In this document: one piece after another, positions 22,431-50,945 of the stretch
Layout: each line of letters opens with the position of its first letter
Position numbering within the stretch: the stretch's first letter is position 1
Virus record (IMG/VR): IMGVR_UViG_3300023174_000046
Location: 153,414-217,413 of that record
Length of the DNA stretch: 64,000 bases
Strand: one strand, 5' to 3'
Notes under the pieces: model-generated
Told to the model about the DNA's origin: nothing
Seen by the model: only the letters and a program-made list of their open reading frames with translations
Database searches by the model: none
Program-made: the position numbers and the translations under genes

Positions 22431-22522
22431 GCGCGGGTGGTGAAACGGCGAAACACATCTGGCTTAAGATCAGATACGGATTAATGATCACACTGTGGGT
22501 TCAAATCCCACCCCGCGTACCA
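22431..22522 (+). tRNA. tRNA-Leu(UAA)
   Basis: GCGCGGG/CCCGCGT acceptor, TCTGG-CTTAAGA-TCAGA anticodon arm, long variable arm, TTCAAAT T-loop, ACCA. Confidence 0.93.
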
Positions 22523-37173: not shown

Positions 37174-37268
37174 GCCTCCGTCGTCTAGCGGTCAAGACAC
37201 ACGGCTTATACCCGTGCTCGGCACCAGATTAGTGCATAACGTTGGTTCGAATCCAACCGGAGGTACCA
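37174..37268 (+). tRNA. tRNA-Ile(UAU) with a 24-nt variable region
   Basis: GCCTCCG/CGGAGGT acceptor, CACGG-CTTATAC-CCGTG, GTTGG-TTCGAAT-CCAAC, ACCA. Confidence 0.85.
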
Positions 37269-48319: not shown

Positions 48320-48350
48320 ATCAGAGTAACGCCCGAGGTGTTACACAGGG

Positions 48351-48385
48351 GGAGGGAGGTTCTTTGAGCCTCCCTCCTTTCTTTT
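48351..48385 (+). terminator. Intrinsic terminator
   Basis: GGAGGGAGGTTC-TTT-GAGCCTCCCTCC + TTTCTTTT. Confidence 0.85.
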
Positions 48386-48420: not shown

Positions 48421-48497
48421 TATTGTAAGAACAAACTTACAAAGCGGAACCGTGACGCGAAAGGAAGCATTGAGTGAAATCAATGCTTCCTTTTTTT
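48421..48497 (+). ncRNA. Candidate ~75-nt small RNA
   Basis: TATAAT at 48410, 7-bp hairpin TTGTAAG/CTTACAA, 13-bp terminator, no ORF. Confidence 0.5.
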
Positions 48498-48694
48498 ATT
48501 TTTTCATCTTGAATCATACCGCGGAGAATATATACTAATGGTATGATGAATAAAAAAGAGAAAAAAATTAAAATATCCGATGAAGAAATTGAATTGCTTG
48601 AAACTGGCTCAACAAATATCGATTGGTTAAATTTTTATAAAGAAATATTTAAATAAAGCTTGCTTAATGAATTGGTTTATTATATATTAGGAGC

Positions 48695-48797
48695 ATGAGA
48701 TTTCGGAGGCCGACAGTTAGGTTAAGCCGGTTCACCTCAAAGTAACCGGTTCATCATCGTAGTTCTCGGGTCTACGTTAAAAAACCGAGATTTTTTT
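48695..48797 (+). promoter_or_regulatory. Leader peptide + hairpin + H-type pseudoknot + U7 (attenuator/riboswitch-like)
   Basis: MRFRRPTVRLSRFTSK; CGTAG/CTACG and TCTCGG/CCGAGA stems. Confidence 0.5.
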
Positions 48798-49010
48798 ATG
48801 AAAACAGTATTAATTTACGATATTGAATATGCAGAACATGATAAGCGCAAAAAGCTTCCTACTGAACTCATTGCCGATCTTGACAGTTACAAATGTCAAG
48901 TTGGTTATGGTAATTTGAATTACCGTACCCATCAAGCAGTTCATGAAGCCACAGGTGTATACGCAAAGCACTGTAAAATTGAGTTGTTAGATGGATGTAA
49001 ACAAGCTTAA
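48798..49010 (+). CDS. Hypothetical protein
   Basis: ORF track. Confidence 0.6.
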   Translation: MKTVLIYDIEYAEHDKRKKLPTELIADLDSYKCQVGYGNLNYRTHQAVHEATGVYAKHCKIELLDGCKQA

Positions 49011-49545: not shown

Positions 49546-50454
49546 ATGAAAATGGATCTTAAAATTAACTCAACGTCGTTCGTCGACATCAATCAAGTAA
49601 ACATTCCGGATGCGTTCTACAGGAGAATGACCTCTGGTATTGAACAGCTCGATAACCTGTTTGGCAGTGGCCTGCTTCCTGGCAGTACTATTACTATTGC
49701 GGCTCGAGCAGGTCTAGGCAAAACTACTCTAATGCTACAATTGCTTCAAGGTCTTGTTAATACAGGTCATGAAGTAGGTTATTGTTCTAATGAAGAATCA
49801 ATTGAGCAATTGGCCATGACTTGTAAGCGTCTCAACGTTAATAACATTCGTGCTTGTAATGAATCTAATGTTGATGTTATTAGCTCTTACATGGATAAGT
49901 TTGATGTGCTTGTTGTGGATTCCTTTCAAGGACTCAGCAAGGGCAATCTATCCGGTCGAGCTCTAGAGAAGTATTGTATTGAGAAGCTCATCAAGAAAGC
50001 TAAAAGCTCTGAATGTGTTCTCATTCTAATCTGTCACAATACTAAGGCAGGTCAGATCAAGGGCAGTTCATTGATCATTCATGCAGTTGATGTGAATATC
50101 GCTATTGAACCTGTTAAAGATGCAGAGATCAATGCACGTCGCATTGTGTTCAATAAAAATCGCTTTGGTCCTTCGAACGATCTGGAATGTTATATTGAGC
50201 AGAATGGTTATGACTTTCAGTCGGAGGTTGCTCTATTGGGCGAAGAAGGTGTCAAGCCGTCCAAGAAGAAAGCCAAGAACCAGCAACGTGAGCAGATCTT
50301 AACCATGGAAGATATCTCCATCAAGGGTGTTTGTAAGTTGTTAGGTATTGATGCAACGAGAGCTGGCTTTCTCCTTCGAGAGCTTCAACTTGAAGGTGTC
50401 ATTGTGAAGGAAGGTCGCGGTGCAGATGCGCGATGGGTTAAAGAGGTGGCTTGA
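49546..50454 (+). CDS. RadA/Sms-like RecA-family ATPase with C-terminal HTH-like region
   Basis: SGIEQLDNLFG.G, ARAGLGKTT, VVDSFQ, H.TKAGQIKG, KNRFG. Confidence 0.85.
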   Translation: MKMDLKINSTSFVDINQVNIPDAFYRRMTSGIEQLDNLFGSGLLPGSTITIAARAGLGKTTLMLQLLQGLVNTGHEVGYCSNEESIEQLAMTCKRLNVNNIRACNESNVDVISSYMDKFDVLVVDSFQGLSKGNLSGRALEKYCIEKLIKKAKSSECVLILICHNTKAGQIKGSSLIIHAVDVNIAIEPVKDAEINARRIVFNKNRFGPSNDLECYIEQNGYDFQSEVALLGEEGVKPSKKKAKNQQREQILTMEDISIKGVCKLLGIDATRAGFLLRELQLEGVIVKEGRGADARWVKEVA

Positions 50455-50945
50455 AGGTAGGATTCAATTGCAGCTCGTTTGACCTCTTGCATGCAGGGCA
50501 TGTCACAATGCTTCGTATGGAAAAAGAACTCTGTGATTATCTCAAAGTAGCTTTGCAGGTTGACCCAACAATTGATAGGCCGGGTATTAAAAACAAACCT
50601 GTGCAGAGTGTTTACGAGAGATACATACAGCTTCAAGCATGCAAGTATGTTGATGAAATTCTCGTTTATAGTACAGAATTTGATTTGTTACAATTGTTGA
50701 TGACACAAACAGTGCATGTACGTTTCTTGAGTGAAGAATACGAGAACAGAGACTTTACAGGTAAACAATACTGCATTGATAATGGAATAGAATTGCATTA
50801 CCATAAGCGTCGTCATGTGTATTCTTCCAGTGAATTGCGCGAAAGAACGGCAAATTTAGAAAGCGCCAAGAAAGAATCTACTGTAGAGGTTCCACCTCAA
50901 TATTCTCCCAAGCTAATAAAAATGCCTAGCAACGTAATCAGCTAA
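50451..50945 (+). CDS. Glycerol-3-phosphate cytidylyltransferase-like (TagD-like)
   Basis: SFDLLHAGH, YVDEI, YSSSELR. Confidence 0.88.
   Translation: MKVGFNCSSFDLLHAGHVTMLRMEKELCDYLKVALQVDPTIDRPGIKNKPVQSVYERYIQLQACKYVDEILVYSTEFDLLQLLMTQTVHVRFLSEEYENRDFTGKQYCIDNGIELHYHKRRHVYSSSELRERTANLESAKKESTVEVPPQYSPKLIKMPSNVIS

What the first reader, a model, noticed from the sequence alone, without database searches (positions are those of the whole stretch)
48660..48800. Arg-codon leader peptide plus preQ1-I-like pseudoknot and U7 directly before an ATG
Seen: the promoter at 48660 leads into MRFRRPTVRLSRFTSK (5 Arg: AGA, CGG, AGG, AGG, CGG), whose stop lies in a CCGGTT/AACCGG hairpin. Next come CGTAG-TTCTCGGGT-CTACG-TTAAAAAA-CCGAGA-T7-ATG. 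Established: preQ1-I aptamers are a 5-bp P1, a loop starting UUC and an A-rich tail closing a pseudoknot, with a loop-terminal C pairing the ligand. Here that base is U. Inference: a variant riboswitch, a pseudoknot terminator, or an attenuator sensing Arg tRNAs (the phage encodes tRNA-Arg UCU).
Basis: partly seen in the sequence, partly recalled or inferred. Interest (0 to 1): 0.6.

Follow-up and report, generated by a model that had tools for sequence, protein, structure and literature searches.

The report
Conserved phage RNA with pseudoknot terminator
The flagged stretch is a real, conserved, about 100-base structured RNA of freshwater T4-like phages that ends in a small pseudoknot plus a run of U. 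It is not a preQ1 riboswitch, and the "arginine leader peptide" is what remains after a neighbouring gene was lost.

Summary
Relatives change the interpretation. The same about 100-nt element (79-80% identical) occurs once per genome in related lake phages. There it lies between the stop codon of an 83-aa gene and a U6-8 run.

This phage lacks that gene. Its promoter and start codon are therefore fused to the element, which creates the 16-codon "Arg leader". That ORF has no start codon and no conserved frame in any relative.

Rfam's preQ1 model scores 13.5 bits against a threshold of 39, and the two relatives searched give no hit. The ligand-pairing C is U in all variants.

Two parts of the observation hold:
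- Hairpin H2 and stem P1 each show a compensatory change.
- The pairing between the P1 loop and the strand just before the U run (P2) was lengthened by paired changes in two lineages.

The element evolves 2-4 times slower than synonymous sites and survived loss of its gene.

Best reading: a conserved structured RNA whose pseudoknot plus U tract acts as a weak intrinsic terminator. It now also serves as the 5' leader of the 70-aa gene. A role as a small RNA is possible. Function is untested, because no RNA data were available.

The parts
48543..48656 (+). 37-aa small ORF upstream, homologous to a 45-aa ORF in relatives. It starts 6 nt after its own -10 hexamer.
   Evidence: the C-terminal part is conserved in L011:1074-1211
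48660..48688 (+). Sigma-70-like promoter (-35 at 48660-48665 with 3 of 6 matches, 17-bp spacer, -10 at 48683-48688 with 5 of 6). It occupies the same position after the small ORF as a much better promoter (11 of 12) in relatives.
48695..48745 (+). 16-codon relic ORF. It is the start codon of the lost 83-aa gene fused to that gene's 3' untranslated region. The ATG lies 6 nt after the -10 hexamer (leaderless geometry).
48702..48723 (+). Conserved 5' block and hairpin H1. In relatives H1 is 7 bp with a bulge. Here it is truncated to 4 pairs (48708-48711 with 48720-48723).
48726..48750 (+). Hairpin H2: 7-bp stem (48726-48732 with 48744-48750) and an invariant 10-13-nt loop. One pair is G-C here and A-U in all relatives. 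One U-A pair is U.G in some relatives and in one strain.
48758..48776 (+). Stem P1 (48758-48762 with 48772-48776) with a 9-nt loop. The fourth pair is A-U in 5 sequences and G-C in 8.
48764..48790 (+). Pseudoknot stem P2: the P1 loop (48764-48769) pairs with 48785-48790. It is 6 bp here, 5 bp in clade C and 4 bp in clades A and D. Loop 3 (48777-48784) is A-rich, and the 2-nt GU junction (48770-48771) is invariant.
48791..48797 (+). U7 tract. It marks the 3' boundary of homology in all lineages and is the presumed release site of a weak intrinsic terminator.
48798..49010 (+). 70-aa gene of unknown function with no promoter of its own. It must be transcribed through the element. Strain differences fall mostly on third codon positions.

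Best explanation
Window 48698-48797 is a discrete, conserved structured RNA module of a small group of T4-like lake phages. It has three hairpins in a row (H1, H2, P1). The loop of the last hairpin pairs with the strand immediately 5' of a U6-8 tract, giving an H-type pseudoknot (P1/P2) with an A-rich third loop.

In relatives the module is the whole 3' untranslated region of a leaderless early 83-aa gene. The P2 stem plus the U tract most likely act as a weak (leaky) intrinsic terminator that closes that transcription unit.

This phage lost the 83-aa ORF. Promoter, start codon and module are now adjacent, which created a 16-codon relic ORF by accident. The promoter therefore makes an RNA of about 100 nt. 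Read-through transcripts carry the module as the 5' leader of the 70-aa gene.

The whole module is under purifying selection and outlived its gene. The RNA therefore probably does more than terminate, for example as a stable or regulatory small RNA.

Shown: homology, flanks, covariation, constraint, and failure of the preQ1 and leader-peptide tests.
Inferred: termination, leaderless transcription start, and any function in trans.
For: Homologous element:
- It follows the 83-aa gene in relatives.
- It is single-copy per genome; the covariance model scores the window at 77 bits, E about 1e-17.
- The 83-aa gene is absent from this CheckV-complete genome.

Boundaries:
- Homology begins at the stop codon and ends at the U run.
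- There are three unrelated downstream contexts.

Structure:
- P1 shows A-U to G-C, and H2 shows G-C to A-U plus U.G.
- 84.6% of cells are paired, against 24-36% when the partners are slid.
- P2 is contiguous for 4, 5 and 6 bp in three lineages, through paired changes at alignment columns 75/101 and 76/100.
- The rival 5'-3' closing helix stays at 3 contiguous pairs in every relative.
- G.U pairs place the structure on the + strand.

Constraint:
- The element is 82-89% identical where third codon positions of the adjacent gene are 57-59% identical.
- Against this window it is 79% identical, versus 61% at third positions of the 70-aa gene.
- Two related strains show 0-1 change in the element against 8-11 in the 213-nt gene next door.

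Terminator:
- The P2 hairpin abuts U7 and folds at -8.5 kcal/mol.
- The best hairpin before this U run ranks about 24th of 547 T runs in the genome.

Leaderless geometry:
- 28 of 122 strong promoter matches have an ATG 6-8 nt after the -10 hexamer.
Against: - No RNA data: the only RNA run laid did not cover the element. Transcript start, end and termination are therefore unmeasured.
- As a terminator the stem is weak. The loop is 15 nt. P2 folds at only -3.2 kcal/mol in the commonest clade, against -22 to -28 for the two canonical terminators 300-450 nt upstream.
- Only three independent states of P1/P2 exist, so the covariation rests on few events.
- The invariant CGG/CCG core of P2 could equally pair with a CGG at the 5' end of the element.
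- The window promoter has a poor -35 hexamer.
- A published preprint reports that structures just upstream of terminators suppress termination. P1 could therefore weaken termination rather than help it.
Confidence: 0.55

Rival explanations
1. The module is chiefly a trans-acting small RNA. In relatives it would be derived from the 3' UTR. Here it would be made from its own promoter. The pseudoknot and U tract would only form its 3' end. Invariant single-stranded parts (the H2 loop, which resembles the 16S anti-Shine-Dalgarno tail, and the linker before P1) would pair with targets.
For: - The whole module is constrained, including loops and linkers.
- It was kept after loss of the ORF, together with a promoter.
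- Promoter plus terminator bracket about 100 nt.
Against: - No complementarity to the phage genome longer than 12 nt.
- The host is unknown.
- No RNA evidence.
- The genome barely uses Shine-Dalgarno sites, so an anti-SD-like seed has no obvious phage target.
Confidence: 0.25
2. A ligand-sensing riboswitch whose pseudoknot aptamer is itself the terminator stem. It would have a preQ1-I-like fold, with U in place of the ligand-pairing C, and might sense a 7-deazapurine or another purine.
For: - Same fold class as preQ1-I: 5-bp P1, short P2, A-rich 8-nt third loop, invariant GU junction.
- The phage encodes a QueC-like enzyme next to an amidotransferase.
Against: - The Rfam PreQ1 score is 13.5 bits against 39, and two relatives searched give no hit.
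- The UUC start of loop 1 is not conserved.
- The junction loop is 2 nt, against 4-6 nt in known aptamers.
- The element lies 117 kb from the QueC gene and next to unrelated small genes that differ between lineages.
- No alternative structure that could switch was found.
Confidence: 0.07
3. A translation-coupled attenuator in which ribosomes stalling at rare Arg codons of the 16-codon ORF alter the downstream terminator.
For: - The ORF starts at a leaderless-type position.
- Four of its five Arg codons are rare: CGG is 4% and AGG 8% of Arg codons.
- The phage carries tRNA-Arg(UCU).
Against: - The ORF exists only in this lineage.
- In 12 distinct related sequences the same sequence follows a stop codon, has no start codon, and reads in shifted frames as unrelated peptides.
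- No conserved antiterminator pairing was found.
Confidence: 0.03
4. A leftover 3' UTR with no present function in this phage, carried along after the ORF deletion.
For: - H1 is truncated here and the promoter's -35 hexamer is degraded.
- The arrangement looks like a product of recombination.
Against: - P2 is strengthened here by four co-ordinated changes.
- Two related strains keep the element nearly unchanged while the neighbouring gene varies.
- The element is more conserved than the neighbouring small ORF.
Confidence: 0.1

Closest known systems
Intrinsic (Rho-independent) terminators, including leaky terminators between early genes of T4-type phages
   Same: A G+C-containing stem directly followed by a U6-8 tract, at the end of a gene cassette and on the coding strand.
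   Different: - The 5' strand of the stem lies inside the loop of an upstream hairpin, so the terminator stem is one half of an H-type pseudoknot.
- The loop is 15 nt and the stem only 4-6 bp.
- A further 60 nt upstream is also conserved.
preQ1-I riboswitch aptamer (Rfam RF00522)
   Same: A small H-type pseudoknot with a 5-bp P1, a short P2 and an A-rich tail that can lie in the P1 minor groove. The window copy also has UUC after P1.
   Different: - The score is far below the Rfam threshold.
- The ligand-pairing C is U in every variant.
- The junction loop is 2 nt.
- The P2 sequence is unrelated to the family consensus.
- UUC is not conserved in relatives.
- There is no queuosine gene context.
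- The U tract follows P2 directly instead of a separate expression platform.
3' UTR-derived and terminator-bearing bacterial small RNAs
   Same: A conserved structured RNA of about 100 nt that shares its terminator with an upstream mRNA. Here it can also be made from its own promoter.
   Different: No target, no chaperone and no RNA evidence. The host is unknown.
'Tug-of-war' arrangement, in which a structure immediately upstream of a terminator suppresses termination (Bushhouse et al., bioRxiv 2026)
   Same: A folded element (P1) abuts the terminator stem, so the two could compete sterically at the RNA exit channel.
   Different: Here the two are interlocked as a pseudoknot rather than placed side by side. 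No ligand is known.
Leader-peptide attenuators (trp, his, pheA type)
   Same: In this phage only: a promoter, a short ORF rich in one amino acid, hairpins, a U tract and then a gene.
   Different: The ORF is not conserved, and there are no alternative antiterminator and terminator pairings. It arose by loss of an 83-aa gene.

Membership tests
preQ1-I riboswitch (RF00522) | Covariance-model score at or above the curated gathering score (39 bits) | tested here: not met
   13.5 bits at 48753-48793, with E = 8.6 in 801 nt and 1.3 in 121 nt. Loci L030 and L033, which carry the element of clades C and D, gave no PreQ1 hit at E up to 10.
preQ1-I riboswitch (RF00522) | Cytosine at the 3' end of the junction loop that pairs with the ligand | tested here: not met
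   The position is U (48771) here and in all 12 related sequences. The junction is an invariant 2-nt GU.
preQ1-I riboswitch (RF00522) | Conserved loop-1 and P2/tail sequence of the family consensus | tested here: not met
   The model alignment matches only P1, UUC and the A run. Relatives have U-only or UUUG loop starts, and P2 is built on CGG/CCG.
preQ1-I riboswitch (RF00522) | Location upstream of queuosine synthesis or transport genes | tested here: not met
   The downstream genes are three unrelated proteins of unknown function in three lineages. The phage's QueC-like gene lies 117 kb away and has no Rfam hit nearby.
preQ1-I riboswitch (RF00522) | Binding of preQ1 or preQ0 | not testable with these tools
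   Needs in-line probing or calorimetry.
Intrinsic terminator | Stable stem immediately followed by a U-rich tract | tested here: met
   A 6-bp stem (-8.5 kcal/mol) abuts U7. In relatives a 4-5 bp stem is followed after 1-2 nt by U6-8. The best hairpin before this U run ranks about 24th of 547 T runs.
Intrinsic terminator | Short hairpin loop (about 3-8 nt) | tested here: not met
   The loop is 15 nt and contains the 3' arm of P1. The consensus scan did not call it.
Intrinsic terminator | Transcripts end at the U tract | not testable with these tools
   All runs laid were contigs, and the RNA run did not cover the element.
H-type RNA pseudoknot | Both stems maintained by compensatory change | tested here: inconclusive
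   P1 has one clear double change (5 against 8 sequences). P2 has an invariant 3-bp core plus pairs gained by double changes in two lineages, but a mismatch at that position in 8 of 13 sequences. Only three independent states exist.
Leader-peptide transcription attenuator | Conserved short ORF with conserved regulatory codons | tested here: not met
   No start codon in relatives, shifted frames and unrelated peptides.
Leader-peptide transcription attenuator | Mutually exclusive antiterminator and terminator pairings | tested here: not met
   The only alternative partner of 48785-48790 (48699-48706) would also place a stem before the U tract, and it is not conserved.

The most novel reading that the evidence does not exclude
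The module could be a new class of phage regulatory RNA in which an H-type pseudoknot is itself the terminator stem. Anything that stabilises or melts the knot would then set how much transcription passes into the next gene. Such a factor could be a small ligand, for example a 7-deazapurine made by the phage's QueC-like enzyme, or a protein. The released 100-nt RNA could act in trans.
Probability: 0.1. Interest if true: 0.8.

Novelty: new variant of a known kind. Interest (0 to 1): 0.5.

Why it matters
If the pseudoknot really is the terminator stem, it is an unusual and very compact way to build a tunable terminator. It would be a candidate new RNA motif from uncultured T4-like phages with no Rfam match.

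The case also shows how loss of an ORF can produce a convincing look-alike of a leader-peptide attenuator. This is a useful caution for sequence-only scans.

The genome-wide leaderless design seen in passing may interest phage and translation specialists more than the element itself.

Tried and rejected
- Rfam at permissive thresholds on the window region, on two relatives, on the QueC region and on the whole window gave no family except the sub-threshold PreQ1 hit and tRNAs.
- BLAST of the locus against GenBank phages found no match.
- No second copy in the genome, so it is not a repeated cassette-boundary element.
- Pattern scans of IMG/VR and JGI metagenomes with three block patterns, and protein-anchored scans, returned only the same few relatives.
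- The protein word search on the 83-aa protein gave two clusters. Members of the close cluster supplied variants C to F. The 50%-identical homologue has a different, longer 3' UTR that the covariance model does not match.
- Stop-codon read-through into the element was rejected: some clades have double stops and in-frame stops.
- A RegB cleavage site at the conserved GGAGG was not pursued, because no RegB gene was found. The control genomes were also blank, so that search is uninformative.
- A MotA-type middle promoter was rejected: no MotA gene, and the box pattern is not enriched.
- Target search by complementarity gave only chance-length matches.
- Pfam, PHROGs and the Atlas gave nothing for the 70-aa, 83-aa and 45-aa proteins.
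- Sequencing runs: the one RNA run held only an unrelated 36-nt match, so there is no expression evidence.
Identities were recomputed from references and the structural alignment was taken from the covariance model.

Full report
**Observation**

The sequence is exactly as described:
- Promoter-like hexamers lie at 48660-48665 and 48683-48688.
- An ATG at 48695 opens a 16-codon ORF with five Arg codons.
- Its stop codon (48743-48745) overlaps the 3' arm of a hairpin.
- A 5-bp stem P1 follows (48758-48762 with 48772-48776).
- An 8-nt A-rich linker comes next.
- A strand at 48785-48790 is complementary to the P1 loop (48764-48769).
- U7 (48791-48797) is followed by the ATG of a 70-aa ORF at 48798.

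Such a pseudoknot directly before a T run occurs once among 547 T runs in this genome. Shuffled upstream sequence gives 0.1 per genome.

**Context**

The window is the last 64 kb of a 217-kb IMG/VR virus record rated complete. The record is a T4-like phage: it has a Gp23 capsid hit, gp32, and RecA-like (UvsX-type) and DnaB-like proteins. It comes from lake water. Contigs from other samples and studies carry the same arrangement, so it is not an assembly artefact (record 8).

**Relatives**

The 70-aa gene has homologues at 77% identity in four IMG/VR contigs. There it overlaps the stop codon of a different upstream ORF and has no leader.

A whole-record search found the flagged element elsewhere in those phages, at 78% identity to window 48698-48799. 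In them, a homologue of the window's 37-aa ORF is followed by a strong promoter, and six bases later by the ATG of an 83-aa gene. The element fills the space from that gene's stop codon to a U6-8 run.

Members of the 83-aa protein's cluster gave more contigs. With those, there are 13 distinct element sequences including the window. They fall into three states of the P1/P2 region:
- the window;
- clades A, B and D;
- clades C, E and F.

Homology starts at the stop codon and ends at the U run in every case. Three unrelated downstream contexts follow. In clades A, B and D the next gene has a late-promoter-like octamer about 6 nt before its ATG.

The 83-aa gene is absent from the window's genome. 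The simplest history is loss of that ORF, which left promoter, ATG and 3' UTR adjacent. The "leader peptide" is that junction. Relatives have no start codon there, and indels give unrelated peptides in the equivalent frame.

**Structure**

A covariance model built from relatives alone finds the window copy at 77 bits, and finds one copy per genome. On the model-fitted alignment:
- The fourth pair of P1 is A-U in 5 sequences and G-C in 8.
- H2 has one G-C to A-U exchange and a U-A to U.G change. One strain variant repeats that U.G change (48745 A>G).
- 84.6% of cells pair, against 24-36% when the 3' partners are slid.

P2 has an invariant three-pair core. Around that core it is contiguous for 4 bp in clades A and D, 5 bp in clade C and 6 bp in the window. 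The extra pairs arose by changes on both strands, at alignment columns 76/100 in clade C and 75/101 in the window.

The core's 3' strand could instead pair with a CGG at the element's 5' end, closing a four-way junction. RNAalifold, which cannot predict pseudoknots, chooses that option. However, that helix stays at three contiguous pairs in all relatives. I therefore favour the pseudoknot at about two to one.

The several G.U pairs would be C.A mismatches on the other strand, so the structure belongs to the + strand transcript. H1 is 7 bp with a bulge in relatives and is truncated to 4 bp here.

**Constraint**

The table compares element identity with third-codon-position identity in a neighbouring gene.

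| Comparison | Element identity | Third-position identity | Gene used |
|---|---|---|---|
| Clade A vs C | 82% | 59% | adjacent 83-aa gene |
| Clade A vs D | 89% | 57% | adjacent 83-aa gene |
| Window vs clade A | 79% | 61% | 70-aa gene |

Two strains about 95-98% identical to the window have 0 and 1 change in the 103-nt element. In the 213-nt gene next door they have 8 and 11 changes, mostly at third positions. Loops and linkers are conserved as well as stems. That is more than a terminator needs.

**Terminator reading**

Evidence that fits a terminator:
- P2 abuts the U tract.
- As a simple hairpin P2 folds at -8.5 kcal/mol here, -6.7 in clade C and -3.2 in clade A. P1 folds at -3.8 to -5.7.
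- The best hairpin before this U run ranks about 24th of 547 T runs.

Evidence that it is weak:
- The two canonical terminators at 48348-48380 and 48459-48494 fold at -22 to -28 kcal/mol.
- The 70-aa and 62-aa genes have no promoter before 49176. Some transcription must therefore read through, which fits a leaky site.

A 2026 preprint reports that structures directly upstream of terminators reduce termination. P1 could therefore tune termination rather than strengthen it. None of this has been measured.

**preQ1**

The Rfam model aligns only P1, UUC and the A run, for 13.5 bits against a gathering score of 39. Loci L030 and L033, which carry the element of clades C and D, give no PreQ1 hit. 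The position of the ligand-pairing C is U in all 13 sequences. The junction loop is two bases. UUC is not conserved.

The phage does encode a QueC-like protein next to an amidotransferase. That gene lies 117 kb away with no RNA-family hit nearby, and no TGT-family enzyme was found. Membership in preQ1-I is rejected. A ligand-responsive knot is not excluded but has no positive support.

**Translation signals**

Only 6.6% of ORF starts have an SD-like tetramer upstream, against 4% background. In contrast, 28 of 122 strong promoter matches place an ATG 6-8 nt after the -10 hexamer, 18 of them at exactly 6 nt.

The AGGAG before 48695 and the GAG in P2 are therefore unlikely to matter. The ATG at 48695 would be the 5' end of a leaderless transcript. 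The relic ORF may thus be translated, but nothing suggests that this regulates anything.

**Verdict**

This is a real, conserved, previously undescribed structured RNA module. The best explanation is a 3' UTR ending in a pseudoknotted, weak intrinsic terminator that gene loss turned into a stand-alone unit and a 5' leader. A small-RNA role is a serious possibility (0.25). A riboswitch is unlikely (0.07). The Arg attenuator is contradicted (0.03).

**Limits**

- There are only three independent sequence states.
- There is no RNA evidence.
- The host is unknown.

Noticed in passing
whole genome G000; in the window e.g. 47236/47243, 48009/48017, 48536/48543, 48688/48695, 49203/49210: Leaderless design: 28 of 122 strong sigma-70-like promoter matches have the ATG of an ORF of 35 or more codons 6-8 nt after the -10 hexamer (18 at exactly 6 nt). 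Only 6.6% of ORF starts have an SD-like tetramer upstream, against 4% background. This is unusual for a T4-like phage and hints at a host that does not rely on Shine-Dalgarno sites.
   Followed up: partly
G000:C1:84503-86180 (L049:8504-10181): A QueC-like protein (185 bits) lies directly upstream of a glutamine-amidotransferase-domain protein. The pair sits between RecA-like (UvsX-type), glycosyltransferase, DnaB-like helicase and gp32 genes. This suggests possible 7-deazaguanine chemistry. No TGT-family hit was found in the genome.
   Followed up: partly
window 48348-48380 and 48459-48494: Two strong canonical terminators in tandem (-28 and -22 kcal/mol) lie after the 100-aa gene, about 300-450 nt upstream of the element.
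   Followed up: partly
L038:1040-1075: One related contig carries a tandem duplication of the unit made of the A run, the P2 3' strand and the U run.
   Followed up: no
L031, L056, L057 just after the U run; L011:1607-1632: In relatives the gene after the element has a T4-late-promoter-like octamer about 6 nt before its ATG. Late genes may therefore be leaderless too.
   Followed up: no
window 37174-37268 and 22431-22522: ARAGORN calls a 95-nt tRNA-Ile(UAU) and a 92-nt tRNA-Leu(UAA). The Ile call is unusually long for its type and may be misassigned. It adjoins tRNA-Met and tRNA-Arg(UCU).
   Followed up: no
L028:394-580 (also L029, L050): The 50%-identical homologue of the 83-aa gene has a different 170-nt 3' UTR. 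An 11-bp long-range stem closes a multi-branched domain right before a U7 run (z = -2.1). A promoter and a cytidylyltransferase gene follow.
   Followed up: partly
window 48798 versus L003:2995-3005: In relatives the 70-aa gene overlaps the preceding ORF's stop codon (coupled translation). Here it starts directly after the U7 run. Both flanks of the element are therefore recombination joints.
   Followed up: partly
window 49546-50945: A 302-aa KaiC/DnaB-like ATPase is followed by a 164-aa cytidylyltransferase-like protein that matches the PHROG family for heptose-phosphate adenylyltransferase.
   Followed up: no
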